The notes below the pieces were generated by a model that worked only from the letters and a program-made list of their open reading frames with translations, was not told where the DNA came from and did no database searches. The translations under genes were made by a program, and so were the position numbers. A stretch of 64,000 nucleotides of DNA from Obrimoposthia wandeli (taxonomy: Eukaryota). This document shows positions 5,895 to 21,699 of the stretch, piece after piece. Numbering within the stretch: the stretch's first letter is position 1; every line of letters begins with the position of its first letter. The stretch is from contig CDROCS010003797.1 of NCBI GenBank assembly GCA_977020255.1, forward strand, positions 248,001 through 312,000, given 5' to 3'.

Positions 5895-8096
5895 TTAAAT
5901 ATTTAGCTCTGTCACATGGTTAACCGACAGTTGATTTCGCCCCTGATCTTTTGCACGATATAACTGCTCATCGGCCAACCTGATCCAATCATCGATGTTT
6001 TCTGAAAATTTAGCATCCGCGCTCACAACACCAATAGATATAGAAATTCTCACCTGCTGATCATCTACGGCAGAGCAACAATGCTCTGCTATTTCTTCTC
6101 GTAATTCTTCAAGTTTTTGCACAACACCATTTTGAGCATCAAACTGCGCAACAATAATAAACTCTTCACCACCAAAACGGGCAACAATATCGCTACGGCG
6201 ATCAAACTTACCTTTCATTAAGTCACTAACGTAGGTTAGGCAGTTATCGCCGATCAAATGGCCAAATTCATCATTAAGCTTTTTAAAGTGATCTAGATCC
6301 AACATGGCAACCATCATACTTGCATCATTTCGTGACAATATCGCTTGTAATTCACTGAATTTTGTTTCGAGGTATCGGCGATTATACAAGCCTGTCAAAC
6401 TGTCCTTATTCGCTAGCTCTTTCAATGTTTTATTGGCTTTATTCAATTCTTTTGTGCGTTTTTCGACTTTTTCTTCCAAAATAAACTGTTCTTTTAACAG
6501 CTTATCTTTAGATTGCAGCAATTCATCATAGAGTGTTAAAAATTCAGTTGGGGCGTCATAAGGCACTGCTTTATAACCTTTTTTACCATCACCGTGCGCC
6601 AGTTCATTTAGCACAAATGCTAACGGTCGATTCAAGGCATAAGAAAATTGATTTGCTAATACAATAACAAAAATAAAGATGAGTGCTAATGACATAAAAA
6701 TAGTCAAATATTGTCGTTCAATTAATTGTAAAATTTGCATATGTTCAATTAAAACATAAACTTTCCAACCATTGCTCAACTCAGTTTTACGGTACAAATA
6801 ACGGTTTTTATTAGAGCCATAAGTCTCAATCGTCATCAACGTATGTTTCAACCTTTCTTGCTCAAAAGAAAAGTTAAATTTAGACATTGTTTTTAGGCCT
6901 AGTGCTTGCCCAGCATAAATAACGTTATCATTTTTATCAGTTAACACTAAATCTATCTGTCGATTACCCAATGTATGACGGTTAACTTGTTCAAATAAAT
7001 TAAGATTTAAAGATCCTTCTACTATACCTACGGGTTGAGAGTTATTACCAGTATAGATAGGAGCGCTAATCGCAATAATAGGATCACTGCCGAAGCCTCG
7101 CCCAAGAAAAACGGGTGAAATATAAGATGATTGATTAAAAAATGCTTGGGTAAAATAAGGCCGATCAGCAACTGTAAAGCTACTACTAGGTAATGTTTCC
7201 ATTAAAGTACGGGGTGAAGACGTTACAATGTGGGCATCTTCATTTGCAATTAGCATGGTCAGAAAACCAGGATAGATTTCGTGAGTTTTTGCCAATGCAT
7301 TATCATAACCAGTCGGCCCAATAACAGACAGTTCATTGGCCACTTGGTCAATAGCCTTTCTGTGGTCATCAACGTGATTTTCAATAATACGACTTAAATA
7401 TTGACTGCCAATATCAAGCTTGTCTTCAAATTGTTGACCTTGCGCATCACTTAAACTACGGCTTAAAATTAAGCAAACACTGACGACAAAAAATGCTGAC
7501 ATCACCCACAAAATGTAGTGTAAATACTGTTTAAGATTTTTAACTAAGGGGGGTTGTTGCGATTTTATGCACCGGTTGAGTTTATCACCAAAGACAAAAA
7601 TTAAGATAACCGCTAAGGCCGTATAAAAAATAGCGTTAATACTTTGTTTAAATAAAGAGAATAACAAGTATTCTTGCGAACCAGACATATTTGACCAGAG
7701 GATTATGGCCGTTAGAGGCATACCAATAACTAGCCAATACAAAAAATCTGCCGTCGGTAAATACCAGCCTCGCCCTCGCATATAGGAGACAAAAAGGGCT
7801 TCCAAACCAAAGGTAATAAAGGCGAATGGGTGCCCCCAAACGATAAGTAAAGGGGTAACACAAATAAAAGCAGATAGCAGGGTTAATGCCGGACGTAGAT
7901 AGGCTGCTGCGATAATGAAAGTAAGATTACCAATAACGAGAGAGATACTATAAGCAAGTTCAATAGGTATGCTATTAAGTAAGGCACCTAGCAAACCTAA
8001 AATTAAGGCAAATAATATGGTACGACCCTGACTAGGCTTTGACTCTGCTGTATTATTATTGAGCTTTACAGCGACTTCTATCGGCGATTTCGCCAT
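5895..8096 (-). CDS. Membrane diguanylate cyclase (N-terminal multi-TM region, Cache-like periplasmic sensor, GGDEF domain)
   Basis: DSLTGLYNRR, LDLDHFKKLNDEFGH and ARFGGEEF, preceded by an RxxD I-site (RRSD). DRPYF and IAISAPI are Cache-like motifs. Confidence 0.88.
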   Translation of the reverse strand: MAKSPIEVAVKLNNNTAESKPSQGRTILFALILGLLGALLNSIPIELAYSISLVIGNLTFIIAAAYLRPALTLLSAFICVTPLLIVWGHPFAFITFGLEALFVSYMRGRGWYLPTADFLYWLVIGMPLTAIILWSNMSGSQEYLLFSLFKQSINAIFYTALAVILIFVFGDKLNRCIKSQQPPLVKNLKQYLHYILWVMSAFFVVSVCLILSRSLSDAQGQQFEDKLDIGSQYLSRIIENHVDDHRKAIDQVANELSVIGPTGYDNALAKTHEIYPGFLTMLIANEDAHIVTSSPRTLMETLPSSSFTVADRPYFTQAFFNQSSYISPVFLGRGFGSDPIIAISAPIYTGNNSQPVGIVEGSLNLNLFEQVNRHTLGNRQIDLVLTDKNDNVIYAGQALGLKTMSKFNFSFEQERLKHTLMTIETYGSNKNRYLYRKTELSNGWKVYVLIEHMQILQLIERQYLTIFMSLALIFIFVIVLANQFSYALNRPLAFVLNELAHGDGKKGYKAVPYDAPTEFLTLYDELLQSKDKLLKEQFILEEKVEKRTKELNKANKTLKELANKDSLTGLYNRRYLETKFSELQAILSRNDASMMVAMLDLDHFKKLNDEFGHLIGDNCLTYVSDLMKGKFDRRSDIVARFGGEEFIIVAQFDAQNGVVQKLEELREEIAEHCCSAVDDQQVRISISIGVVSADAKFSENIDDWIRLADEQLYRAKDQGRNQLSVNHVTELNI

Positions 8097-8724: not shown

Positions 8725-10623
8725 TTACATCATATCAGCGAACGGATTCTTTGTTGGTAACACTATTTTATTAGCAAATCCTGTCACACTAATATCAGCG
8801 TCCGTTAGGGTAACGTCGTCATCCGTTAATGTACCATCACCAAAACGGTAAATAACTTGAAACTCGCCGTGATCGGCTAGTGTTTGATATTTCACTCTTG
8901 CTTGCTGAACAAGTTCGCTCTTATCACGATAACTTGCCATCACATCGCTACCATGACGTTTTTCCATCATCGCTAATGTTACCGCAGGAGAAAGCAAAGT
9001 CGCTGTTGCATTATTGCCACCAAAACCTTTTGAGTTAATAAAAGCAACGTCCATGCTTTGACAGTCCCAGTGCTCTGTCGCAATATTTAAGCGTTCGTTA
9101 TAAACATCATCTGCCACTTTATCAATAGTGGTAATGCCCGGCATAATATTATGCGCGAAAATACCCAGTGCCATTGCCACCTGATCGCCACTTGCTGGAC
9201 CAATAGTGTGACCAACAAATGCTTTAGGCGCTGCGACTGGCCAATCATTAATATCAAAACTTTTCGCCACTCGATCATAAATTAACGATTCAGTGACCCG
9301 GTTTTGCGGTGTACTTGAACCATGCGCCAATATAAAACTACGCTGTTGAATCGACTCAGCGCCAACAATAGATTGTGCCAATGAAACAGATTTAGCCATA
9401 GTAATGTAATTACCTGGACCAGGCGCGGTAATTGACTTTTTAATGCCATCAGCATTGGTAAATACGTCAGCAACTGAACCCAGAACGTTAGCGCCAAGCT
9501 CCATAGCCAAAGTATCATCAACCAAAATAATAAACTGCGCCGCTTCACCAATGGTAAAACCACAGTTATCACCGAACGGACGACTCGTACGGCGGTGATC
9601 AGCTATGCCATTACCATCAATTTTCTTCAAGCCTTCTTCATTAGCAAGCGCGCTCATATTACCAAAGCCTTCAACTACTTCAGGAGTGATAGCACAATCA
9701 TTACTACCTACAATGGCTAAACGAATTCGACCTGCTTGCATATCTTGTACTGCTGCTTTTAAATTATATAAAAACGTTGCACAAGCCCCCGTAGAAGTAA
9801 ACGTTGTGCCGACATTGCCAGTCACATACGCATTAATAAAATCCGTTGACATAGTATTTAAGCCAAGCGCTAAATTTTTAGTAGAAACACGTTCGCCTTT
9901 TAGGCGATTTTGCATCATGCCACCAACACCTTCAGCTTGTGTTTGACCGAAAACAGACGCTGAATAAGTGCCTATTTCGTCTGGGCTCACTTTGTCCGCA
10001 ATTTCGTTCCAGCTGTAACCTGTAGAATGGATAGCATCAGCTGCACCAAATACCGTCGCTTGCAAACCGCGCGGCTGATAACGGCTGTTATACAAACTTG
10101 CGGGTTTAAAGCCGGTAGGGAATTGTCCAGCAGCTTTAATTGGGTTATCGCGAGTTGAGTCATGTTTCACTTCAATCTCGCCAGCAATATCAACACGAAC
10201 ACGTTTTTCGGCTAACTCGGTAATTTTCCATGTCCGTGGCAATGGACTCGGCAAATCACGGGCACGTGTTTCAAAGCTAATACCTTTGTCGCCAGTGTCC
10301 ATGGTTAATTTTTGCTGCCAAGGTGTTGCGTCTGGATCAAAGTGCTCATGCTCAATTTTACGAATCAAGGTACCCGCTAAAATTTCTTTCGCAAAGCGTT
10401 GTTCTACATCTGATTTTTCAACCGCATTACCTTCACTATCAACCAGTTTGCCATCTTCGCTAGTTAATAAATTCATTAACGTGGCTAAGCCAACAAAAGT
10501 CTCCTGACGGGCTTCAGCATTTAATTTGTCGATAACAATGCGGCGAAAGCCTTGGTGAAATGATGTTCTACCAGCAGCGTTAATGCCACCCATGCCAATT
10601 ATAATCGGTAATGCAGTCATGAA
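8725..10623 (-). CDS. fabY: FabY-type beta-ketoacyl synthase (KAS I/II-domain initiation enzyme)
   Basis: N-terminus MTALPIIIGMGGINAAGRTSFHQGFRR resembles Pseudomonas FabY. Catalytic Cys (TGACATF), His (AHGSSTPQN), His (VGHTIG) and NSKGFGGNNA. Start taken at the ATG at 10623. Confidence 0.8.
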   Translation of the reverse strand, partial: FMTALPIIIGMGGINAAGRTSFHQGFRRIVIDKLNAEARQETFVGLATLMNLLTSEDGKLVDSEGNAVEKSDVEQRFAKEILAGTLIRKIEHEHFDPDATPWQQKLTMDTGDKGISFETRARDLPSPLPRTWKITELAEKRVRVDIAGEIEVKHDSTRDNPIKAAGQFPTGFKPASLYNSRYQPRGLQATVFGAADAIHSTGYSWNEIADKVSPDEIGTYSASVFGQTQAEGVGGMMQNRLKGERVSTKNLALGLNTMSTDFINAYVTGNVGTTFTSTGACATFLYNLKAAVQDMQAGRIRLAIVGSNDCAITPEVVEGFGNMSALANEEGLKKIDGNGIADHRRTSRPFGDNCGFTIGEAAQFIILVDDTLAMELGANVLGSVADVFTNADGIKKSITAPGPGNYITMAKSVSLAQSIVGAESIQQRSFILAHGSSTPQNRVTESLIYDRVAKSFDINDWPVAAPKAFVGHTIGPASGDQVAMALGIFAHNIMPGITTIDKVADDVYNERLNIATEHWDCQSMDVAFINSKGFGGNNATATLLSPAVTLAMMEKRHGSDVMASYRDKSELVQQARVKYQTLADHGEFQVIYRFGDGTLTDDDVTLTDADISVTGFANKIVLPTKNPFADMM

Positions 10624-10697
10624 AAATCTCTTTAAATTCAAACCAAATATTTATGCTGCTCAGTGTAAAAGTAACTACAAATAAATAATGTTCATAT

Positions 10698-10725
10698 ATA
10701 GCCATAAAACATGTCAAAATAGCCA
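10698..10725. promoter_or_regulatory. Candidate AraC-family operator, ATAGCCA direct repeat at 21-bp spacing
   Basis: ATAGCCA at 10698 and 10719 in the divergent fabY/regulator intergenic region. Confidence 0.45.
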
Positions 10726-10755
10726 AATAAAAATAAAAGGATAAAATTAAGCCTG

Positions 10756-11775
10756 ATGAAAGCTACATTAAAGCGCAAAAAAGACACCACGATTAACATT
10801 GCTTTACTCCTTTACGATCATATGTTGGCCACTAGTGTTAGTTTACCAGTTGAAATGTTACGTGCCGGTGAAGCGGTAGCCTTGCAAGAAAACCGTCATG
10901 CACCTCGTTTAGCTATTCAAATGGTGGCTGAGACTATCAAGCCAATCTCCACTCGTGCCTTAATAAAGCTGCTGCCTGACACTGATATTGCCCATGCCCA
11001 GCGTCCTGACTTTGCTTTTATTCCAAGTTTATGGCGCAACCCTAGGCCAACCATAGCCAAACAACCCAAAATGTTACAATGGTTAAGTGATATTTGGAGC
11101 CAAGGCTCGACCTTAATTGGTGGTGGTACCGGTGTATGTTTAATGGCGGAAACAGGTATTTTAGATAATCATCCTGCCACCACGCATTGGCACTATGTGG
11201 AACAATTTAAACGTGACTACCCTAAAGTAGATTTGAAACCCGACTTCTTTATCACCCAATCAGAACGCACTTATTGTGCCGCTAGCTTAAATGCTTTAGC
11301 TGATATTGTTGTGCATATTATTTTTCAAATTTACGGACAAAATGCCGCTCAACAGGTTGAGCGAAATTTTTCACACGAAATTAGAAGGCCTTACGAAGAG
11401 CAACGTTATTTGGAAGGAGCCGTTGATCGCCATCCCGACGAATTAATCAGCCAAATTCAATTTTGGTTAAAAATTAATGTCAATTCGTCATTAACGCTAA
11501 ATGACATTGCGCAACAATTTGGCATTAGTCAGCGTTCATTTACCCGCAGGTTTAAACTTGCCACGGGTATTAATGCTACGCAATACTGGCAAAAATTAAA
11601 AATACAAACGGCAAAAGATTTACTCGCAGCCAGTAATTTGTCGATTCAAGAAGTGGCTTTTCAAGTGGGCTATCAAGACCAAGCGAACTTTACTCGGCTA
11701 TTTAAAAAAATGCTGAACTTAACACCAAAAGCTTACCGTGCCATGGTGCGAAAAAAGCTCTTTAGCAACAGCTAA
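10756..11775 (+). CDS. GlxA-family (DJ-1/PfpI + AraC HTH) transcriptional regulator
   Basis: HPATTHW in the N-terminal domain. C-terminal SQRSFTRRFK and VAFQVGYQDQANFTRLFKK double HTH. Confidence 0.9.
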   Translation: MKATLKRKKDTTINIALLLYDHMLATSVSLPVEMLRAGEAVALQENRHAPRLAIQMVAETIKPISTRALIKLLPDTDIAHAQRPDFAFIPSLWRNPRPTIAKQPKMLQWLSDIWSQGSTLIGGGTGVCLMAETGILDNHPATTHWHYVEQFKRDYPKVDLKPDFFITQSERTYCAASLNALADIVVHIIFQIYGQNAAQQVERNFSHEIRRPYEEQRYLEGAVDRHPDELISQIQFWLKINVNSSLTLNDIAQQFGISQRSFTRRFKLATGINATQYWQKLKIQTAKDLLAASNLSIQEVAFQVGYQDQANFTRLFKKMLNLTPKAYRAMVRKKLFSNS

Positions 11776-11829: not shown

Positions 11830-12141
11830 TTACGCGCAAAATTCACTATGCAGAAAACTAATCAACTTCACGACTGAAGGATTTGCGATACTGTAAAATA
11901 TGGTTTGTGATTCACGGCGCGTTTTAACTAAATTGTCTTGACGAAGGCGGGCTAAATGCTGTGAGAGGCTAGATTGACTTAAATCGACAAAGTTATTCAG
12001 TTCATTAACCGACATTTCCTTTTCCCCTAAATGACACAAAATCAATAGTCGATGCTCGTTACTCATGGCTTTTAATAAGTCAGCAGCTTGCGAAGCATTC
12101 TCTCGCATTTCTTTGATATCAATGGTGGCTAACTCGGTCAT
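11830..12141 (-). CDS. ArsR/SmtB family repressor, BigR/SqrR/YgaV/HlyU-like with two Cys
   Basis: LKAMSNEHRLLILCHL...SQSSLSQHLARLR...RRESQTIFYSI...EFCA, with Cys36 and Cys102. Confidence 0.88.
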   Translation of the reverse strand: MTELATIDIKEMRENASQAADLLKAMSNEHRLLILCHLGEKEMSVNELNNFVDLSQSSLSQHLARLRQDNLVKTRRESQTIFYSIANPSVVKLISFLHSEFCA

Positions 12142-12208
12142 GCGTCACTCTCTATTATTTATTGCTAACGTTATTTAATCAGGAGGATTATTTCTAGTTG
12201 GATATTAC

Positions 12209-12252
12209 ATTAGATACTGCTAATATAAAAGTATATTACAACTTTCTAATAT
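12209..12252. promoter_or_regulatory. Twin palindromic operator candidates (AT)ATTAG-N6-CTAATAT
   Basis: ATTAG-atactg-CTAATAT (12209-12226) and ATATTAC-aacttt-CTAATAT (12233-12252). Confidence 0.55.
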
Positions 12253-12313
12253 AAGATAGAAAGTAACAAATTGAGACTTTGACTTCGGTCTCACCGCTAA
12301 ACAAGGAAGCATT

Positions 12314-14899
12314 TTGAACTATCAACGCCTGTTAAACTTTGCCATTGCAAAGCCCAAAATTATCTATAGCTTAGTGTTGATGGCCGCACTCGTTAGTTTA
12401 GCGATGCTGCCGCAGATTACTATCGATACTGATCCTGAGAATATGCTCAGCCAAGATGCTCCTGCACGCGTATTTCATAATCAAATAAAAACTGACTTTC
12501 TAATGCGCGATATGATAGTCGTCGGCTTAGTCAGCGACACCAGTATTTTCACACCCGAAACATTAACCACCATAACGCAATTAACTAATGATATTCTGCT
12601 CATTGAAGGTGTCATCAAACAAGATTTACTCTCACTCAATGTCGTCGACAATATTAGTCAGTTAACCGACGAACAAGGCGTTAACCAAGGTGTTTTGTTC
12701 GAATACCTCATGAAAACTGCACCAACAACAGCGCAAGCAAGTGATGAAATTCAGCAAGCGGTTAAGCGCTTGCCTATGCTAGATAACACCTTGGTTTCTG
12801 GCGATGATAAAGCCGTTGCTATTTATGTACCGATTATCGCCAAAGATCAAAGCTATATCATCGCAGAAAAAATCCGAGCCTTGGCTGCTAAACTACCAAC
12901 TATTGAACAAAACAATTTAACTTTTCATATTACCGGATTACCCGTCGCTGAAGACCAATTTGGCTATGAAATGTTTGTACAAATGGGCGTTGCTGCACCA
13001 TTAGCCGGTTTAGCTATATTTGTATTACTGTGGTTATTCTTTCGAAACCTTGCCTTAATCATTGCGCCAATGGTAGTTGCAATGGCAACGGTTGTGATCA
13101 TTATGGGCAGCTTGATCGGCTTAGGATTTACCGTTCATATTATGTCTTCGATGATCGCGATATTCCTAATGCCCATCGCCGTGGTCGATTCAGTGCATAT
13201 TTTGTCTGAATTTGCCGATCGTTTTAAAAGTGGTGACGATGCAGCTAAAACCATCAAAAAAGTCATGGGGCATTTATATAAGCCGATGTTATTTACCTCA
13301 ATAACTTCTGCCGTGGGTTTTTATTCCTTAATGTTGACCCCTATTCCGCCAGTAAAAGTTTTTGGCGCCTTTATTGGCAGCGGTATTTTGTTAGCCTTTG
13401 TCTTAACCATTACGTATATCCCGGCTTACATTGCACGCATGAAGCCAGAAACCTTAGCTAAATTGCAACGTGCTGTCGCTTTAATGGAAGAAAAAGGCCG
13501 CTTAGCGAACATGCTAGAGCAACTCGGCATTTTTTCAGTAAAACGCAGCAAATTAATTTTAGTGGCTTTTATCGCTTTATTTGCCTTCAGCGTGGTCGGT
13601 GTTAATCGTATTATCATTAATGACAACCCAGTGAACTGGTTTAAGGCCGATCATGAAATTCGTCTTGCTGACAAAGTCCTTAATCAGCACTTCGCCGGGA
13701 CTTACGATGCATGGTTAGTTTTTAGTCATAACAATCCTCAACAGCAAGCGGCTCTCGATACTTTTACCAAAATCCTTAACACCGCCGATGACAGTCAAAC
13801 AAAAAGCACTATTTCACAGTTGTATCAGCAATGGCTAAACAACGATGAAAGTGAGAAAGTTAGCTTTTTCAGCCAAGAGTTATTAATAACAATTGATGAT
13901 TTTAGCTTTAGCGCTAGCGAAAAAGAGCAACCTTGGCTTGAACAACTCTATAAAGTCAGTGAGCAAGCAAACAACGACCAAAAAATATTTACTGATCCCA
14001 GCATGCTTAATTGGCTAGCAAAGTTACAAACAGCCATTGTTAATCAAGGCGATGTTGGCAAAATAAACAGTTTGACCGATATTGTAAGCACAGTGAACCG
14101 TGAACTAAACTCTGGCGACGATGAAGACTTTGCTATCCCTCAAAGCAGCAATGGAGTCGCACAAACCTTATTGCAATTTCAGTCTTCTCATCGTCCACAA
14201 GATTTGTGGCACTTTGTTAGTCAAGATTATCAACACACGCTTTTGTGGCTACAAATGAATAATGGCGACAATCAACATATGGCTAATGTGGTCAGTTGGG
14301 TCGACAACTACATCAATAAGAATCCACCACCGGTCGACGTTACGCATCAGTGGGCAGGTAAATCCTACCTCAATGTTGTCTGGCAAGACGCAATGGTTAG
14401 CGGCATGATCGACAGCCTACTGTCCTCATTTGTGGTGGTGTTTTTTATTATGGTGATACTGTTTAGATCGCTAAAATACGGCTTATTGGCCATGCTACCA
14501 CTCACCTTTACCATCACCATGATTTATGGTCTAGTTGGCTGGTTTGGTAAAGCTTATGACATGCCTATTGCGGTGCTATCAGCATTAACATTGGGGCTAT
14601 CGATTGATTTTGCGATTCATTTTCTGCAACGTGTACGTGAATTAGAAGTTGAGCAACAAAGCTTACGCTTAGCACTAAAAGCGATGTTTCAAGAACCTAG
14701 CCGTGCAATCACTCGCAATGCCATTGTTATTGCCATTGGTTTTACGCCATTGTTATTGTCGCCGCTTATGCCTTACATCACCGTTGGTTTTTTCTTGGCT
14801 AGTATCATGATTTTATCGGCACTAGTCACCTTAGTGTTACTACCGGCAATATTGACGTTATTAGCCCGTGGCAATGACATTAGCACAACGAAAATTTGA
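12314..14899 (+). CDS. MMPL/RND-superfamily transporter
   Basis: Two repeats of 1 TM + periplasmic loop + 5 TM. ITIDTDPENML, and conserved Asp in PIAVVDSVH and GLSIDFAIHF. Confidence 0.88.
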   Translation: MNYQRLLNFAIAKPKIIYSLVLMAALVSLAMLPQITIDTDPENMLSQDAPARVFHNQIKTDFLMRDMIVVGLVSDTSIFTPETLTTITQLTNDILLIEGVIKQDLLSLNVVDNISQLTDEQGVNQGVLFEYLMKTAPTTAQASDEIQQAVKRLPMLDNTLVSGDDKAVAIYVPIIAKDQSYIIAEKIRALAAKLPTIEQNNLTFHITGLPVAEDQFGYEMFVQMGVAAPLAGLAIFVLLWLFFRNLALIIAPMVVAMATVVIIMGSLIGLGFTVHIMSSMIAIFLMPIAVVDSVHILSEFADRFKSGDDAAKTIKKVMGHLYKPMLFTSITSAVGFYSLMLTPIPPVKVFGAFIGSGILLAFVLTITYIPAYIARMKPETLAKLQRAVALMEEKGRLANMLEQLGIFSVKRSKLILVAFIALFAFSVVGVNRIIINDNPVNWFKADHEIRLADKVLNQHFAGTYDAWLVFSHNNPQQQAALDTFTKILNTADDSQTKSTISQLYQQWLNNDESEKVSFFSQELLITIDDFSFSASEKEQPWLEQLYKVSEQANNDQKIFTDPSMLNWLAKLQTAIVNQGDVGKINSLTDIVSTVNRELNSGDDEDFAIPQSSNGVAQTLLQFQSSHRPQDLWHFVSQDYQHTLLWLQMNNGDNQHMANVVSWVDNYINKNPPPVDVTHQWAGKSYLNVVWQDAMVSGMIDSLLSSFVVVFFIMVILFRSLKYGLLAMLPLTFTITMIYGLVGWFGKAYDMPIAVLSALTLGLSIDFAIHFLQRVRELEVEQQSLRLALKAMFQEPSRAITRNAIVIAIGFTPLLLSPLMPYITVGFFLASIMILSALVTLVLLPAILTLLARGNDISTTKI

Positions 14900-14918
14900 C
14901 CGTACAAAGGAAGCTATC

Positions 14919-15758
14919 ATGATGATTAACGTAAATAAGTACAGCAAAAAATTAGCACTATCATTCACCTTGTTAATAATCGCTAATATTAGCCTGCATG
15001 CTGAAAATTTTTCGATCAAGAGTAATGACAGCACAGCGAAAGAAGTCAGCGATATTATTGATCAAGCTAACCTTGCCTCATATTATGCCGGCGAAGACGG
15101 CAGTGCAGAAGCGCGAATGATTATTGTCGATGAAAACGGTAATCGCCAAATGCGGCAATTTACCATTTTACGTAAAGATGAAAAAGATCTCGGTGATCAA
15201 CATATGCTGGTGTTTTTTTCTCAGCCGAGTAATGTCAAAGACACTGTTTTCCGTGTCGAAAAACAATTAGCAGAAGACGATAATCGTTGGTTATTTTTAC
15301 CCGCACTCGATCTTGTTAAGCGTATTTCGGCTGGTGATAAACGCACCTCTTTTGTTGGCTCACATTTTTACTATGAAGATGTTTCTGGCCGTAATCCGAT
15401 AGAAGATAACTTCACCTTAATCAGCGAAGATAAAGACACTTACGTTATTAGCGCAATCCCAAAAGATCCACAAAGTGTCGAATTTAGTCGCTACACGGTA
15501 AAAATCGATAAAAGTAACTTTTTACCGATGGAAACCACTTATTTCGATCAAAACCAGCAAGCGATACGCAAAATGACTGTGTTAGAAGTAAAAACTATTG
15601 ACGGTATACCAACAGTAATGAAATCACGCATTAGCAATTTAAGTAATAATAGTTATACCGAAATGCAATTTCGAGGTGTTAAATACAACCTTGGTTTACC
15701 CGATAATATTTTTAGTGAGCGTAGCATGCGTACACCACCGAAAGCTTGGTTAAACTAA
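14919..15758 (+). CDS. LolA-like 'outer membrane lipoprotein-sorting' periplasmic protein
   Basis: Signal peptide, RWLFLPALDLVKRISAGDKRTSFVGSHFYYED motif, LPDNIFSERSM C-terminus. Start chosen at the ATG after the AAGGAAG RBS (ORF track starts at 14868). Confidence 0.8.
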   Translation: MMINVNKYSKKLALSFTLLIIANISLHAENFSIKSNDSTAKEVSDIIDQANLASYYAGEDGSAEARMIIVDENGNRQMRQFTILRKDEKDLGDQHMLVFFSQPSNVKDTVFRVEKQLAEDDNRWLFLPALDLVKRISAGDKRTSFVGSHFYYEDVSGRNPIEDNFTLISEDKDTYVISAIPKDPQSVEFSRYTVKIDKSNFLPMETTYFDQNQQAIRKMTVLEVKTIDGIPTVMKSRISNLSNNSYTEMQFRGVKYNLGLPDNIFSERSMRTPPKAWLN

Positions 15759-15791
15759 ATCACAGCAAATAGCCGGAGCTGGTCGTTTAAA

Positions 15792-17222
15792 ATGATAAAT
15801 ATCAATATATTGCTCTTATCTAAGACACTCGCGTCATATCAAGCGCTAGCACATCAGCCATCGCTAAATAAGCAAAAGGCAGCTAAGTTTGTGCTCAAAC
15901 TTACGTTGCTGTGCACGCTATTATTTATCACCAACGTATCATCGGCAGCTAATAGTGAAGATAATCAGCAAGCGAATCAAGAGGATAGTTGGGCTGATGA
16001 TTGGGCTGAAGAAGAAACCCAATCACCATGGCAATTAACCGGTTTTGTCGAAGCGGGCTATGGGCAATTTTTACAAACTAACATCGTCAAAAGTTCGGCC
16101 TCATTAAATGAACTAAGAGCGAGAATTAATCTCGATTACAGTCATGAATTATTCGATGTTAGCAGTAAAATAGACAGCTACTATGACGCTGTTTTAACAA
16201 AAACCGTATTGCAAACTCGAGAACTCAGTATTAGTGCAAGCCCTTTTAGTTTCTTAGACATAAAAGCCGGTAGACAAGTATTAACCTGGGGCACAGGCGA
16301 TTATTTATTTCTCAATGATCTATTTGCTAAAGACTGGCAAGCATTTTTTTCTGGTCGCGCTGATGAATACTTAAAAGCACCGTCAACGAGTATCAGAACA
16401 AATTGGTTTTTTAACGCGGTGAATTTCACTTTAGTATGGACGCCTGAATTTACTGCCGATAATTATATTAACGGCGAGCGCTTTTCATTTTATTCACCGC
16501 AAGCACAGCAAATAGTGGCACCCGCGCAGGACTTCTCTGTTGATAAAACGCAGCGCTCACAATGGTCTGCACGCTTAAATACCCGCATTAACGATATTGA
16601 AGTGTCGTTATATAGCTATCAAGGCTCATGGCCAACGCCTGTTGGCACTCAACTATCAACAGAGCTACAAACAGAAAATACCCAATTAAGGCAAAGCCAA
16701 GGCTACTTTCCAAAGTTAAATTCTTGGGGCATCAGCGCATTAACGCCATTTCAAGGTGGTATTATCAACCTTGAATACGCAAGCTATAACAGCACCGAAA
16801 ATAGTAACGGACAAAACAATAACATAGCGAATGGTCAACATAGATTCTTGATTGGCTATGAGCGAGAATTAGCGAAAAACCTCACCGTCAGTATGCAATA
16901 TTATCTTGAGCGCACTAAGCATTACCAAGCATTAGTTGCGCATAGTGCAACCCCTGAACAATTAGTTGATGAAAACCGTCAGTTAGTAACCTTACGTTTA
17001 AGCTATCGCGCCTTGCGACAAACCTTGGTTTATTCCATGTTTGCCTTTTATTCACCTAGCGATCGAGACGGCTACTTAAAGCCCTCACTCAATTATCAAT
17101 ATAACGACCAATGGTTGTTTAGCACGGGGGCTAATCTATTTTTTGGCGACAATGATTATTCTTTTTTTGGCCAACATCAAGACAATAGCAATGCTTGGTT
17201 ACGTGTGCGCTATCAGTATTAA
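15792..17222 (+). CDS. Outer-membrane beta-barrel protein (DUF1302-like)
   Basis: Signal peptide, alternating amphipathic strands, KAGRQVLTWG motif, C-terminal aromatic residue (RVRYQY). Confidence 0.7.
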   Translation: MININILLLSKTLASYQALAHQPSLNKQKAAKFVLKLTLLCTLLFITNVSSAANSEDNQQANQEDSWADDWAEEETQSPWQLTGFVEAGYGQFLQTNIVKSSASLNELRARINLDYSHELFDVSSKIDSYYDAVLTKTVLQTRELSISASPFSFLDIKAGRQVLTWGTGDYLFLNDLFAKDWQAFFSGRADEYLKAPSTSIRTNWFFNAVNFTLVWTPEFTADNYINGERFSFYSPQAQQIVAPAQDFSVDKTQRSQWSARLNTRINDIEVSLYSYQGSWPTPVGTQLSTELQTENTQLRQSQGYFPKLNSWGISALTPFQGGIINLEYASYNSTENSNGQNNNIANGQHRFLIGYERELAKNLTVSMQYYLERTKHYQALVAHSATPEQLVDENRQLVTLRLSYRALRQTLVYSMFAFYSPSDRDGYLKPSLNYQYNDQWLFSTGANLFFGDNDYSFFGQHQDNSNAWLRVRYQY

Positions 17223-17309: not shown

Positions 17310-17642
17310 TTACAGAAAAATAAAATAGCCCCAACTCGCCAACAGCAATAACCAAGGCAATGCTAAAAGTGCTTTTGCACCGTTTGCAGAACTGCCTGAT
17401 TTCACATTTTCAGATGATAACGTATCAGTTGATTCAACTTTCACTTTTGCCGCAACAGTTTTTTTACGTTGTTTATCCCGCTCGCGTGACTTCACCTTTT
17501 GCTGTTTTTTATATTCGCTAATGCCTTTTTCAATACCTTGAGCAATCAATTTCGTTTGCTCTTTCGTTTGTGCTTTTTTCTGCGTGCCCTTAGCAATGCG
17601 TAACGCTTCATTTTGTACTTCGGTTGAAACTTGAGCTGTCAA
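17310..17642 (-). CDS. Small basic protein with C-terminal TM anchor (DUF2956-like)
   Basis: IAKGTQKK...QTKLIAQGIEKGI...YKKQQK and LPWLLLLASW. GAGGAG RBS before a TTG start. Confidence 0.7.
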   Translation of the reverse strand: MTAQVSTEVQNEALRIAKGTQKKAQTKEQTKLIAQGIEKGISEYKKQQKVKSRERDKQRKKTVAAKVKVESTDTLSSENVKSGSSANGAKALLALPWLLLLASWGYFIFL

Positions 17643-17817
17643 AACTGCACTCCTCTATATTTTTTAATTGATTCTTTTTAATCGATTATTTTAATTGCTT
17701 ATATAATGCCATTATTAGCGCGAGATTTTAAGCGCAAAGCTTGCCAGCTAGACTTGGCTGCGGCAAAATACGCGCAACGACTTTATGGTCACAAAATTTC
17801 ACTAAAATAGGAAAATC

Positions 17818-18450
17818 ATGAGCGATTTACTGAGCACCGCGAAAAACCAAATTACACAAATGCTTTCAATGCAAGATGCCATGAATTCACGTGTCAGTGA
17901 AACTTGGCGTGATAATAATTATGAATGGTACCGTGCCATTTGGGTTGAATGTGCAGAAATGCTAGATCACCATGGTTGGAAATGGTGGAAACACCAAGAA
18001 ATTGATGTCGCTCAAGTACAGTTAGAATTAGTCGACATTTTTCATTTTGGCCTAAGCTTACGTTTAATGACTGGCGAGTCAATTGAAGCTATTACCCAAA
18101 CGTTAGCTAGCGAATTAACTCACAATAGCGGTGAGCAAGATTTTAAAATTGCCTTAGAAGCTCTTGCCTCTTCAGCGGTCACCGATAAAGCTTTTAACGC
18201 CTTAGCACTAGCTGATTGTATGCGTTTAATGTCGATGGATTTAAACGAACTTTTCCGTCAATATGTTGGTAAAAACACCTTGAACTTCTTTCGCCAAGAT
18301 CACGGCTATAAAGAAGGCAGCTATATCAAAATGTGGCATGGTGAGGAAGATAACGAAGTACTAGCCAATTTAGTGACGACCCTTGATACTAGCGCTGATG
18401 ACTTTCAGCAGCAGCTTTACGCTGCATTAGAAGCTAAATACCCAAAATAA
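17818..18450 (+). CDS. Dimeric all-alpha dUTPase
   Basis: VECAEM, WKWWK, ELVDIFHF, YVGKNTLNFFRQDHGY and EDNE motifs of the dUTPase_2 family. Confidence 0.85.
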   Translation: MSDLLSTAKNQITQMLSMQDAMNSRVSETWRDNNYEWYRAIWVECAEMLDHHGWKWWKHQEIDVAQVQLELVDIFHFGLSLRLMTGESIEAITQTLASELTHNSGEQDFKIALEALASSAVTDKAFNALALADCMRLMSMDLNELFRQYVGKNTLNFFRQDHGYKEGSYIKMWHGEEDNEVLANLVTTLDTSADDFQQQLYAALEAKYPK

Positions 18451-18463
18451 CAGCATGATAAAA

Positions 18464-18508
18464 ATTAAGTAATACATTAAAAATCAATAAATTAATGTAT
18501 TACTTAAT
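18464..18508. terminator. Perfect 17-bp AT-rich inverted repeat after the dUTPase gene
   Basis: ATTAAGTAATACATTAA-N11-TTAATGTATTACTTAAT. Confidence 0.45.
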
Positions 18509-18616
18509 AAAGATAATACCTATTTATCAATCTTTAGCTTCATCATGTTATCTCTGGCTCACTTTTTGCTTTATCTGATTAACTAAGATAAACGTCAAGA
18601 ATTTGAACTGCCGGAG

Positions 18617-19282
18617 ATGTATATGGAACTTATTCTATTTGCCATGATCAGCCTTGTTGTTATTGTTGCGATGCTTGCCAGTCGCTTGAACGATAATAGC
18701 TTTCCTTTCCCTTTCGATCGTAAAACTGCTTTATTTACTCCTGCAGAAAAAAACTTTCAGAACCTAGTTGAACAAGCGCTGGGGGAAAGGTATCGTATTA
18801 TCAATCGTGTGAAACTTGCCGACATCGTTAGTATTCGTAACGGCGTATCGAGCAGAGCTGGCCAAACCGCAGTAAACAATGCTAATAGTAAATATTTAGA
18901 CTTTGTTATTTGTGAGCGCGATAGCATGAAGTTATTGGGCGTTATTGATTTAGTCGACACGCAAGGCAAAGGTTATAAAATCAAAAAAGATTGGTTTGTC
19001 AGCGGTGCGCTTGAAGCGGCTTCTATCCCACATATTCGTATCAAGGTAAAACCTAACTACACTATTGATGAAATTCGTGCCTGCATTAACAGCCGAATAT
19101 TAGGTAATAATGCACCTTCACCAAAAATTAAAGGCCGAATTATTCCAGCGCCTTTAGTTAAAGCACGCCCGAGATCGTCAGGTGTATTATCTCCTGCTGC
19201 GGCACAAGCTATGTTACCAAAAGATAACGGCGCTATGGCCGGACAGCTGTCTTCACCACAAGTGGCTGCTTTACCACACTAG
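18617..19282 (+). CDS. DUF2726 domain protein
   Basis: N-terminal TM, LFTPAE, KVKLAD-like RVKLAD, LDFVICE motifs. Confidence 0.75.
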   Translation: MYMELILFAMISLVVIVAMLASRLNDNSFPFPFDRKTALFTPAEKNFQNLVEQALGERYRIINRVKLADIVSIRNGVSSRAGQTAVNNANSKYLDFVICERDSMKLLGVIDLVDTQGKGYKIKKDWFVSGALEAASIPHIRIKVKPNYTIDEIRACINSRILGNNAPSPKIKGRIIPAPLVKARPRSSGVLSPAAAQAMLPKDNGAMAGQLSSPQVAALPH

Positions 19283-21309: not shown

Positions 21310-21699
21310 ATGAAACTTATTAAATCTACACTGATTGTTTTATTAAGTATTTTTTCATTTTTTACTTTTGCAGCACAAACACCGCTTATTTCACAACAAG
21401 ATTTATTAGCGCTAATGGCGACACCAACTAACAACGTTTTACTGCTCGATGTTCGCAGCGCTGAAGAGTTTGCTGAAGGTCACATTAAAGGCGCAGTTAA
21501 TATCAGTCATGAGCAAATTAACGCGAATCTCAGTAAAATTCTTGCTTTTAAAGATCAAACTGTTGTCGTGCACTGTCGTTCAGGTAGGCGTGCGCTAAGT
21601 GCAGAAACTGACTTACGAGCTGCAGGCTTTAGTAATCTTAGACACCTTGATGGTGATATGAATGGCTGGCAAGCAGCTGATTTACCTCTGATAAAATAA
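21310..21699 (+). CDS. Exported single-domain rhodanese (PspE-like)
   Basis: Signal peptide, LLDVRSAEEFAEGHIKGAVNI, active-site loop HCRSGRR. Confidence 0.88.
   Translation: MKLIKSTLIVLLSIFSFFTFAAQTPLISQQDLLALMATPTNNVLLLDVRSAEEFAEGHIKGAVNISHEQINANLSKILAFKDQTVVVHCRSGRRALSAETDLRAAGFSNLRHLDGDMNGWQAADLPLIK

What the first reader, a model, noticed from the sequence alone, without database searches (positions are those of the whole stretch)
11830..17222. Candidate undescribed redox/persulfide-controlled trans-envelope transport system: two-Cys ArsR divergent from MMPL + LolA-like + beta-barrel
Seen in sequence: three co-oriented, closely spaced genes encode an inner-membrane MMPL/RND transporter (Asp kept in both TM4- and TM10-equivalent helices), a periplasmic LolA-fold protein and an outer-membrane barrel. 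Together they span the envelope with no MFP or TolC. The divergent 103-aa ArsR has Cys36 (LILCHL) and Cys102 (EFCA). Established: this Cys pair matches BigR/SqrR, which form a tetrasulfide bridge on persulfide exposure and usually control sulfur-detoxification genes. MMPL and LolA-fold proteins move lipophilic cargo. Inference: this is a sulfide/persulfide-inducible route for a hydrophobic molecule (sulfane sulfur, a lipid or a lipoprotein) across the envelope. I know of no characterised example of this coupling.
Basis: partly seen in the sequence, partly recalled or inferred. Interest (0 to 1): 0.75.

Follow-up and report, generated by a model that had tools for sequence, protein, structure and literature searches.

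The report
Sulfide-controlled trans-envelope lipophile exporter operon
A marine Colwellia-type bacterium carries a three-gene machine spanning both membranes (pump, periplasmic carrier, outer-membrane barrel) that comparative genomics ties to reactive-sulfur sensors and sulfide-oxidising genes, making it a candidate route for expelling oily sulfur species, for which I know of no established route.

Summary
The window holds a 103-aa ArsR (Cys36, Cys102) divergent from a co-oriented MMPL/HAE3 RND pump, a secreted LolA_like protein and a β-barrel. The barrel is a divergent DUF1302 relative.

In 73 related loci from about 10 gammaproteobacterial families the three-gene core never varies. In 71 of the 73 it carries a reactive-sulfur regulatory signature:
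- a two-Cys ArsR in four arrangements, both Cys invariant in all 55 copies;
- a tandem ATTAG-N6-CTAAT operator upstream of the pump. It persists where the ArsR lies elsewhere, and it also precedes Blh-type persulfide dioxygenase genes;
- a σ54 promoter next to a FisR-like activator, most of them also beside type I SQR;
- a two-Cys CsoR-family gene.

A more distant locus encodes ArsR, SQR, a YgaP-like TM protein, pump, carrier and barrel in one co-directional array.

The most likely function is sulfide/persulfide-induced, proton-driven export of a lipophilic sulfane-sulfur species (S8 or organic polysulfanes). The regulatory link is strong. The cargo is inferred.

The pump–carrier–barrel architecture is already known (AmeABCD; DUF1302/DUF1329/RND). 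The sulfur coupling was not found in the searchable literature. Verdict: new variant of a known kind.

The parts
11830..12141 (-). Two-Cys ArsR-family regulator (Cys36 in α2, Cys102 at the C-terminus) of the BigR/SqrR/HlyU/YgaV persulfide-sensor type
   Evidence: Pfam HTH_5 9.4e-11. NCBIfam BigR model 87.9 bits, below its cutoff of 155. Best solved relatives are HlyU, SqrR, NolR, YgaV and BigR, with both Cys aligned. Both Cys are invariant in 55 syntenic homologues.
12195..12253 (.). Invariant block of about 55 bp in the divergent control region; the flanking intergenic DNA is poorly conserved
   Evidence: Alignment of 10 Colwelliaceae intergenic regions.
12198..12226 (+). Putative σ70 promoter of the pump operon: TTGGAT, 17 nt, TAATAT, with TG upstream of the -10 (inferred)
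   Evidence: Read from the sequence and conserved. In relatives the -35 reads TTGATA. The consensus scanner did not list it, so this is inference only.
12209..12224 (.). Operator site 1, a perfect palindrome ATTAG-N6-CTAAT that overlaps the putative spacer and -10
   Evidence: The loci hold 83 perfect sites in 1.21 Mb against 2.3 expected. Of these, 73 fall within -250..+70 of the pump start.
12235..12250 (.). Operator site 2, ATTAC-N6-CTAAT (one mismatch), 26 bp after site 1
   Evidence: The pair spacing is 25-26 bp in 37 loci.
12314..14899 (+). Inner-membrane RND pump of the MMPL/HAE3 (COG1033) type. It has two large periplasmic loops, Asp292 and Asp765 in the TM4/TM10 equivalents, and no Cys.
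   Evidence: The TTG start is preceded by a conserved AAGGAAG.
14868..15758 (+). Soluble periplasmic LolA-fold carrier (PF17131). Probable true start at ATG 14919. No lipobox and no Cys.
   Evidence: Pfam 6.6e-53. PDB relatives 4z48, 9tp6 (P. gingivalis LolA3) and 3bk5. N-termini compared across loci.
15792..17222 (+). Outer-membrane β-barrel, a divergent relative of DUF1302. It has a signal peptide and a C-terminal aromatic residue.
   Evidence: AlphaFold2 model and Foldseek. More than 2,756 homologues and 1,605 representative clusters. Relatives P0180, P0185 and P0254 pass the DUF1302 gathering score.

Best explanation
This is a four-gene module: a sensor plus a three-part transporter.

In the reduced state, the ArsR dimer binds the two ATTAG-N6-CTAAT palindromes over the pump promoter and represses the operon (inferred). 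It probably also represses its own divergent gene. When sulfide is oxidised to sulfane sulfur (persulfides and polysulfides), Cys36 and Cys102 become bridged, as shown experimentally for SqrR, BigR and HlyU. The protein then leaves the DNA and the operon is transcribed.

The MMPL/HAE3 pump would use the proton gradient (Asp292, Asp765) to extract a lipophilic molecule from the inner membrane or periplasm. It would hand the molecule to the soluble LolA-fold carrier, which delivers it to the DUF1302-like barrel for release into or across the outer membrane. No MFP or TolC is involved.

The leading cargo candidate is zero-valent sulfur, as S8 or organic/inorganic polysulfanes made by SQR and related chemistry.

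Shown here: the gene content, conserved synteny, conserved Cys, the conserved operator shared with persulfide dioxygenase genes, and the alternative regulators. Inferred: repression, induction by sulfide, direction of transport and cargo.
For: 1. Core trio. It is invariant in 74-75 loci across about 10 gammaproteobacterial families. It is also invariant in the more distant relatives.

2. ArsR. A two-Cys ArsR lies adjacent in 54 of 73 loci, in four arrangements: divergent upstream; co-directional upstream; directly after the barrel; and downstream, paired with a rhodanese. Both Cys are invariant in 55 of 55 copies. The closest solved relatives are the persulfide sensors HlyU, SqrR, YgaV and BigR. 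HlyU was shown to react with persulfides and not with H2O2 (PMC10509353).

3. Operator. Of 83 perfect ATTAG-N6-CTAAT sites, 73 lie in the 1.9% of bases around the pump start, against 2.3 sites expected in total. The sites persist in Ferrimonas, Kangiella, L039 and L048, where the ArsR is distant or absent from the locus. The same site lies about 30-46 bp upstream of Blh-type persulfide dioxygenase genes in L027, L032 and L078. In Kangiella it sits in the intergenic region shared by PDO and the pump gene.

4. Alternative regulators. Six Alteromonadaceae loci replace the operator with a -24/-12 σ54 promoter. Five of them carry an adjacent σ54 activator with a conserved Cys-rich N-terminus, and four carry type I SQR (3sz0, 1.2e-163); three of those also carry cytochrome bd. 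FisR is a sulfide-turned-on activator (PMC7315123), which gives the sign of regulation. Three loci carry a two-Cys CsoR-family gene directly upstream.

5. Distant locus L084. It encodes ArsR (both Cys kept), type I SQR, a YgaP-like TM protein, pump, carrier and barrel co-directionally. L087 and L088 also carry a YgaP-like TM protein.

6. Cys depletion. The three transporter proteins hold 0.07-0.08% Cys against 1.1% in neighbouring ORFs. This fits proteins that handle thiol-reactive cargo.
Against: No experiment exists. The cargo is pure inference, and related cassettes are linked to monoterpenes, alkanes and fatty esters rather than sulfur.

The window itself holds no SQR, PDO or TauE.

The ArsR scores below NCBIfam's BigR cutoff. 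Its nearest solved relative, HlyU, acts as an activator.

The number of independent regulator switches is small: 3 broad changes on the pump tree. Much of the ArsR synteny is therefore shared ancestry.

The FisR-like and CsoR-like assignments rest on domain content, Cys patterns and neighbours only. The CsoR-like Cys56 is not at the CstR position.

Some distant relatives have a MarR or no sulfur gene nearby.
Confidence: 0.6

Rival explanations
1. Sulfide-responsive envelope remodelling. The regulation is the same, but the cargo is an ordinary lipid or outer-membrane component. It would be moved to the outer membrane to change permeability or biofilm properties under sulfide stress.
For: The related DUF1302/DUF1329/BNR/RND cluster was proposed to export a cell-wall component on the basis of cofitness. 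MMPL/HAE3 relatives move lipids such as hopanoids and mycolates (one search hits to HpnN and MmpL3). BigR-type regulons are tied to biofilm.
Against: No lipid-biosynthesis gene recurs beside the operon in 80 loci. The recurring neighbours are sulfur-oxidation enzymes.
Confidence: 0.15
2. Generic efflux of hydrophobic toxic organics, AmeABCD-like. The two-Cys sensors would respond to thiol-reactive electrophiles in general rather than to sulfide specifically.
For: AmeABCD confers monoterpene tolerance. TOL_3187/3188 is induced on C28 alkane. A FadL gene lies upstream in Ferrimonas. A MarR lies upstream in L081.
Against: The operator is shared with persulfide dioxygenase genes. The operon sits next to SQR and to a FisR-like activator. 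HlyU-type sensors were shown to be persulfide-specific.
Confidence: 0.1
3. The ArsR acts like HlyU, as an activator or anti-silencer. Reactive sulfur would then switch the operon off rather than on.
For: HlyU is the closest solved relative, at about 51% identity. The hlyA operator contains ATTAA-N6-CTAAA, two mismatches from the motif found here.
Against: Site 1 overlaps the putative -10 and spacer, which is typical of repression. In the sister clade the operon is driven by a σ54 promoter next to a FisR-like activator, and FisR is switched on by sulfide. The same operator precedes PDO genes, which BigR represses in known systems.
Confidence: 0.1
4. Uptake route. The barrel and carrier would bring extracellular hydrophobic sulfur (S8), or another hydrophobic substrate, inwards for oxidation.
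For: AupA/AupB- and FadL-type systems import hydrophobic substrates (from my own knowledge, not tested here). PDO needs sulfane sulfur as its substrate.
Against: Characterised RND/MMPL pumps work outwards. The proton-relay Asp residues are kept. No cytoplasmic-membrane importer is encoded in the operon.
Confidence: 0.05

Closest known systems
AmeABCD of Castellaniella defragrans, and the DUF1302-DUF1329-BNR(COG4447)-RND(COG1033) cluster of Shewanella, Kangiella and Pseudomonas
   Same: An HAE3/COG1033 RND pump is encoded with a LolA-superfamily periplasmic protein and a DUF1302-type outer-membrane barrel. No MFP or TolC is present. A trans-envelope route for hydrophobic cargo has been proposed.
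   Different: There are three genes here, not four, and no COG4447/BNR protein. The carrier is PF17131 rather than DUF1329 (only faint hits). The barrel is about 440 aa and fails the DUF1302 model itself. The gene order is pump first. The system is linked to reactive-sulfur regulators rather than to terpene or fatty-ester metabolism.
Thalassolituus oleivorans TOL_3187 (MMPL-LolA-like fusion) and TOL_3188 (domain-less porin)
   Same: MMPL plus a LolA-like module, followed by an outer-membrane protein without a Pfam domain.
   Different: There the pump and carrier are fused, and the genes are induced on C28 alkane.
BigR / SqrR / HlyU / YgaV persulfide-sensing ArsR regulators (SSN cluster 4)
   Same: Same fold, the same α2/α5 Cys pair, no metal site, and AT-rich palindromic operators. 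The relatives' genomic neighbours are rhodanese, Blh/PDO, TauE and a YgaP-like TM protein.
   Different: The known regulons hold sulfur-detoxification enzymes and small-molecule sulfur transporters (TauE, YeeE), toxins or photosynthesis genes. I found no report of an RND-LolA-barrel system as a target.
Aryl-polyene/xanthomonadin-type export sets (MMPL + LolA-like + LolB-like); from my own knowledge, not tested here
   Same: An MMPL pump and LolA-fold proteins move a lipophilic product to the outer membrane.
   Different: Those clusters sit inside biosynthetic gene clusters and use a LolB-like lipoprotein rather than a large β-barrel.
Tripartite HAE1 RND pumps (AcrAB-TolC)
   Same: Proton-driven RND export across the whole envelope.
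   Different: There is no membrane-fusion protein and no TolC-family duct. A soluble carrier takes the place of a continuous channel.

Membership tests
Persulfide-sensing ArsR regulators (BigR/SqrR/HlyU/YgaV type) | ArsR/SmtB winged-helix fold | tested here: met
   Pfam HTH_5 9.4e-11. NCBIfam HTH_metalloreg 89 bits, above its cutoff of 55.
Persulfide-sensing ArsR regulators (BigR/SqrR/HlyU/YgaV type) | Cys pair in α2 and α5 aligned with the sensing pair of SqrR and HlyU | tested here: met
   Cys36 and Cys102 align with the Cys pairs of HlyU and SqrR. Both are invariant in 55 syntenic homologues.
Persulfide-sensing ArsR regulators (BigR/SqrR/HlyU/YgaV type) | No α3 CXC or α5 metal site | tested here: met
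   The protein has only two Cys in total and no CXC motif.
Persulfide-sensing ArsR regulators (BigR/SqrR/HlyU/YgaV type) | Forms a tetrasulfide bridge and leaves DNA on persulfide treatment | not testable with these tools
   This needs mass spectrometry and DNA-binding assays.
BigR equivalog (NCBIfam NF040642) | Score above the curated cutoff | tested here: not met
   87.9 bits against a cutoff of 155. It is a relative, not an orthologue by that model.
MMPL / HAE3 RND transporters | Pfam MMPL domains, 12-TM layout with two large periplasmic loops | tested here: met
   PF03176 5.7e-38 in two stretches. The hydropathy profile shows TM1, a loop at 38-245, a TM cluster, a loop at 431-698, and a second TM cluster.
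MMPL / HAE3 RND transporters | Acidic proton-relay residues in TM4 and TM10 | tested here: met
   Asp292 and Asp765 align with the Dispatched TM4 and TM10 Asp.
MMPL / HAE3 RND transporters | TIGR00921 (HAE3) curated cutoff | tested here: not met
   179.7 bits against a cutoff of 351.9. It is a divergent member.
LolA_like (PF17131) | Pfam gathering score and a secreted protein | tested here: met
   179.5 bits against a cutoff of 30. Signal peptide without a lipobox. PDB relatives 4z48, 9tp6 and 3bk5.
DUF1302 (PF06980) outer-membrane barrels | Pfam gathering score | tested here: inconclusive
   The window protein has no hit. Five of 18 close relatives give weak hits. Three more distant relatives pass 23.2 bits. 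The β-barrel fold is supported.
AmeABCD / DUF1302-DUF1329-BNR-RND four-gene cassette | A COG4447/BNR β-propeller gene and a DUF1329 gene in the cassette | tested here: not met
   No such gene is present in the window or recurs in 80 loci. DUF1329 gives only faint hits on the carrier.
Tripartite RND (HAE1) pumps | Adjacent MFP and a TolC-family outer-membrane factor | tested here: not met
   None among the annotated neighbours or the recurrent neighbour families.

The most novel reading that the evidence does not exclude
This pump-carrier-barrel trio is the dedicated route by which sulfide-oxidising Gram-negative bacteria expel hydrophobic zero-valent sulfur (S8/polysulfanes) made by SQR across the periplasm and outer membrane. 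I know of no identified machinery for this step.
Probability: 0.25. Interest if true: 0.85.

Novelty: new variant of a known kind. Interest (0 to 1): 0.7.

Why it matters
To my knowledge, how lipophilic sulfane sulfur leaves a Gram-negative cell is not established. Known sulfide-stress regulons contain enzymes and small-ion exporters, but I found no report of a trans-envelope system among them.

HAE3 + LolA-fold + DUF1302-type cassettes are widespread, yet their functions remain unresolved. Here one clade of these cassettes is wired in different lineages to three different kinds of regulator associated with reactive sulfur, and it is sometimes fused into one gene array with SQR. That gives the orphan transporter family a concrete, testable physiological role, and it gives sulfur biology a candidate exporter.

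Kangiella aquimarina DSM 16071, for which mutant-fitness data were reported, and cultured Colwellia, Thalassotalea, Ferrimonas and Bowmanella species carry the system, so the tests are straightforward.

Tried and rejected
**Barrel family scans.** Pfam and NCBIfam scans of the barrel gave nothing usable, and a PDB sequence search gave nothing. The family link came only through relatives.

**Promoter and terminator scan.** Hits in the region were at chance level, and the scan missed the conserved promoter-like block.

**Operator elsewhere in the window.** The other three one-mismatch hits are at the chance level of 3.8, so no further regulon member is claimed in the 64 kb.

**Literature.** Searches pairing persulfide, sulfide, sulfane sulfur or SQR with MMPL, LolA, RND or the lipoprotein-sorting name found no relevant paper. 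A BigR operator search returned mostly unrelated papers. The HAE3 search was badly posed and uninformative. The original BigR-box paper (PMC1951920) is not held. I therefore could not compare the motif with the published BigR box, only with the hlyA operator.

**σ54 family representative.** The first one I scanned (L033) turned out to be an ordinary NtrC-type response regulator. It had been grouped with the Cys-rich FisR-like proteins by single-linkage clustering. I corrected this after alignment.

**Ruled out.**
- That the rhodanese 4 kb downstream (21310-21699) belongs to the module: it has no operator, and its position is conserved only within Colwelliaceae.
- That the AraC and KAS-like genes upstream belong to it: they are syntenic only in Colwelliaceae/Thalassotalea.

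**Other.** Rfam and tRNA scans of the window found nothing. The window contains no N and nothing human-like.
Full report
**What is in the window.**

The minus-strand gene 11830-12141 encodes a 103-aa ArsR-family protein (Pfam HTH_5, 9.4e-11). Its only two cysteines are Cys36 (LILCHL) and Cys102 (EFCA). Its best solved relatives are V. cholerae HlyU (3e-27, about 51% identity), V. vulnificus HlyU, R. capsulatus SqrR (1.6e-22, about 41%), NolR, E. coli YgaV and Xylella BigR. Both Cys align with the sensing pair of HlyU and SqrR. It scores 87.9 bits on NCBIfam's BigR model, below the cutoff of 155. So it is a member of the two-Cys group but not a BigR orthologue by that model.

Three co-oriented genes run divergently from it.
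- **12314-14899** encodes an 861-aa MMPL/HAE3-type RND pump (Pfam MMPL 5.7e-38; TIGR00921 7.5e-53, below its cutoff). It has the usual two large periplasmic loops. Asp292 and Asp765 align with the TM4 and TM10 acidic residues of Dispatched.
- **14868-15758** encodes a LolA_like protein (PF17131, 6.6e-53). It has a type-I signal peptide and no lipobox. Its solved relatives are 4z48, 3bk5 and 9tp6. 9tp6 is P. gingivalis LolA3, which does not pair with LolB and is thought to have a separate function (PMC13103446).
- **15792-17222** encodes a 476-aa protein with no family hit of its own. It folds as an all-β barrel (pLDDT 71, pTM 0.66). It matches porins, and AlgE best by TM-score.

The barrel family is large: more than 2,756 word-search hits and 1,605 representative clusters. 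Some relatives pass the DUF1302 gathering score, so it is a divergent DUF1302-type barrel. No MFP or TolC gene is nearby. The best matches are Colwellia/Cognaticolwellia. The window has no N, tRNA or Rfam match.

**Synteny survey.** A scan of one genome per species with a barrel profile returned 80 loci. They come from Colwelliaceae, Alteromonadaceae, Endozoicomonadaceae, Shewanellaceae (Parashewanella), Kangiellaceae, Ferrimonadaceae, Cellvibrionaceae, Microbulbiferaceae, Idiomarinaceae and others.

The order pump-carrier-barrel is kept in every locus with coverage. Clustering all flanking ORFs showed that the ArsR is the only gene family following the trio across families (52 loci by clustering, 55 copies by profile). 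The AraC, KAS-like, dUTPase and DUF2726 neighbours of the window are kept only within Colwelliaceae/Thalassotalea.

The ArsR occupies four different positions:
- divergent upstream (43 loci plus the window);
- co-directional upstream (Microbulbifer, L078);
- directly after the barrel on the same strand (L065, L068, L071, L074, L080);
- about 1 kb downstream, paired with a rhodanese (five Kangiella loci).

The equivalents of Cys36 and Cys102 are present in all 55 copies.

**A conserved operator.** The divergent intergenic regions share a palindrome, ATTAG-N6-CTAAT, usually as a pair 25-26 bp apart. In the window the sites are 12209-12224 (perfect) and 12235-12250 (one mismatch).

Across 1.21 Mb of loci there are 83 perfect sites, against 2.3 expected from composition. 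Of these, 73 fall within -250..+70 of the pump start, a region that makes up 1.9% of the bases. In ten Colwelliaceae the sites lie in an invariant block of about 55 bp flanked by unconserved DNA. Site 1 overlaps a plausible -35/-10 pair (TTGGAT or TTGATA, then TAATAT preceded by TG). That placement suggests repression by occlusion, but this is inference.

Two facts make the motif informative.

First, it is retained upstream of the pump where no ArsR lies within 8 kb (four Ferrimonas loci, L036, L039, L048, L055). It is also retained in Kangiella, where the ArsR is on the far side of the operon.

Second, most of the few perfect sites elsewhere lie just upstream of genes for a Blh-type persulfide dioxygenase (NF040641 C-terminal domain, 6.6e-111), the DUF442 sulfurtransferase or the ArsR itself. 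This is seen in L027, L032, L078, L022 and L026. In Kangiella the pair sits in the 102-bp region between the divergent dioxygenase gene and the pump gene. The transporter therefore appears to belong to the same regulon as a classic BigR target.

The V. cholerae hlyA operator used for HlyU binding contains ATTAA-N6-CTAAA, two mismatches away. In the 64-kb window no other convincing site exists.

**Other regulators in lineages without the operator.**

*σ54 clade.* Six Alteromonadaceae loci (L062, L064, L069, L072, L077, L079) have a -24/-12 σ54 promoter match (TGGC-N8-TTGC/T). In five of them it lies about 40-55 bp upstream of the pump start, and in L072 at -11. In five of the six (all but L069) a σ54 activator follows the barrel. 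Its N-terminal domain carries at least four conserved Cys (positions 60, 71, 78 and 83 in L062). In L064, L077 and L079 this activator is divergent from a type I sulfide:quinone oxidoreductase (1.2e-163 to A. ferrooxidans SQR). The SQR is followed by cytochrome bd genes in L064 and L079 and, in L077, by persulfide dioxygenase/TauE genes. L069 has the SQR without the activator, L062 has PDO and TauE instead of SQR, and L072 has the activator alone.

This matches the layout of FisR systems. FisR senses reactive sulfur through three conserved Cys and switches on sqr/pdo (PMC7315123, PMC9774590). The FisR identity here is not proven.

*CsoR clade.* Three loci (L060, L063, L076) have a CsoR-family gene immediately upstream on the same strand. 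It has two conserved Cys (32 and 56) and lacks the Cu(I) His/Cys ligands. The second Cys is not at the CstR position, so I call it only CsoR-family with a candidate thiol switch.

*Second ArsR clade.* The five loci with the ArsR after the barrel carry a different ArsR clade, 41-48% identical to the window's and with a changed recognition helix. They have different upstream repeats.

*No signature.* Only the two Endonucleobacter symbiont loci show none of these signatures.

On a tree of the pump, the broad regulator class changes three times and the arrangement changes twelve times. The independent events are therefore few, but they all point the same way.

**More distant relatives.** A profile search followed by context look-ups showed the trio intact in every contig with room for it.

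L084, a high-GC genome, encodes in one direction: cytochrome bd, a Tll0287-like protein, an ArsR with both Cys, a type I SQR (1.7e-158), a 67-aa YgaP-like TM protein, pump, carrier and barrel. L087 has ArsR (both Cys), pump, a YgaP-like TM protein, carrier, barrel and GFA. L088 has a YgaP-like TM protein after the barrel. L081 has a MarR instead. L089 and L090 show no sulfur gene. The sulfur link therefore extends beyond the close clade but is not universal.

**Mechanism.** The best-supported reading is a module induced by reactive sulfur.
1. The reduced ArsR sits on the tandem operators.
2. Sulfane sulfur bridges Cys36 and Cys102, chemistry that has been shown for SqrR, BigR and HlyU.
3. The repressor leaves the DNA.
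4. The pump, driven by the proton gradient, passes a lipophilic molecule to the soluble LolA-fold carrier and on to the barrel.

The σ54/FisR-like clade supplies the sign of regulation: on with sulfide.

The cargo is not known. Several observations make zero-valent sulfur (S8, polysulfanes, possibly organic polysulfanes) the leading candidate:
- co-regulation with persulfide dioxygenase;
- adjacency or fusion with SQR, whose product is sulfane sulfur at the membrane;
- the rhodanese and YgaP-like neighbours;
- the near-absence of Cys in all three proteins, 0.07-0.08% against 1.1% in neighbouring ORFs. Envelope proteins are Cys-poor in general, so this last point is weak.

I put about 0.75 on the regulatory link, 0.6 on the statement as a whole, and about 0.25-0.3 on sulfur itself being the cargo.

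**Comparison with what is known.** The architecture is not new. AmeABCD of Castellaniella combines an HAE3 pump, a DUF1302 barrel, a DUF1329 LolA-fold protein and COG4447, and confers monoterpene tolerance. A cofit DUF1302/DUF1329/BNR/RND cluster has been proposed to export a cell-wall component. Thalassolituus TOL_3187/3188 is an MMPL-LolA fusion plus a porin, induced on C28 alkane.

This system differs in four ways. It has three genes and no BNR protein. Its carrier is PF17131-type. Its barrel is shorter and divergent. And it is wired to reactive-sulfur sensors.

Reviews and primary papers on BigR, SqrR, HlyU, FisR and CstR list sulfurtransferases, dioxygenases and small sulfur transporters as neighbours or targets, not an RND-LolA-barrel system. 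Targeted full-text searches found no paper making the connection. The library is limited to open-access papers, so absence there is not proof of absence.

**Verdict.** I classify it as a new variant of a known kind, with interest 0.7.

Noticed in passing
window 12314-17222 and the orthologues in L001-L080: All three transporter proteins are almost Cys-free, at 0.07-0.08% against 1.1% in neighbouring ORFs. The window's pump and carrier have none. The barrel has one, inside its signal peptide.
   Followed up: partly
window 8725-11775: An AraC/FtrA-like regulator (10756-11775, +) and a 638-aa ketoacyl-synthase-like gene (8725-10641, -) sit next to the ArsR. The pair is syntenic in about 29 Colwelliaceae/Thalassotalea loci but not beyond, so it probably does not belong to the module.
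   Followed up: partly
window 21310-21699: A 129-aa rhodanese lies 4 kb downstream, between a CobD-like gene and a Gly_transporter (UPF0126) gene. It has no operator nearby. Rhodanese genes do sit directly beside the operon or the ArsR in Kangiella, Ferrimonas and Bowmanella.
   Followed up: partly
L084:4270-4473, L087:3001-3177, L088:8034-8276: A small YgaP-like TM protein (PF11127, 58-80 aa) is inserted in or beside the operon in distant relatives. Two of the three sequences were read and both have a conserved FCP motif. It is absent from the window.
   Followed up: partly
L060:3918-4181, L063:4265-4528, L076:4136-4423: These CsoR-family proteins have Cys32, His51 and Cys56 conserved but lack the canonical Cu(I) ligands. 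The second Cys is one helical turn away from the CstR position. This may be a distinct thiol-sensing subgroup.
   Followed up: partly
L065, L068, L071, L074, L080, upstream of the pump gene: The clade with the ArsR after the barrel lacks ATTAG-N6-CTAAT. Instead it shows CTAAATTAG-type palindromes and CGAAATA...TATTTCG inverted repeats. L068 also has a CCTCACA heptamer repeated about six times upstream.
   Followed up: no
L043, L045 (Candidatus Endonucleobacter): The trio is kept in these intranuclear mussel symbionts, but no regulator, operator or sulfur gene is seen within 8 kb.
   Followed up: no
L033, L051: L033 is labelled a Phenylobacterium MAG, yet its pump nests among Alteromonadales/Colwelliaceae sequences, so it is probably mis-binned. 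'Shewanella sp. OPT22' (L051) is nearly identical to Parashewanella.
   Followed up: no
L058, L061, L070, L075 (Ferrimonas): A FadL/Toluene_X outer-membrane transporter gene lies directly upstream of the pump gene, and a rhodanese gene lies directly after the barrel. The ArsR operator pair is present although no ArsR gene is in the locus.
   Followed up: partly
window 5895-8096 and 17310-19282: Other neighbours are a dCache-GGDEF diguanylate cyclase (-), DUF2956 (-), a dimeric-type dUTPase_2 and DUF2726. They appear unrelated to the finding.
   Followed up: no
L084:4181-4269: The short repeat TTTGCATAT occurs twice, with a third partial copy (TTTGCGTAT) between them, between the SQR gene and the YgaP-like TM gene. 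It may be an internal regulatory site.
   Followed up: no
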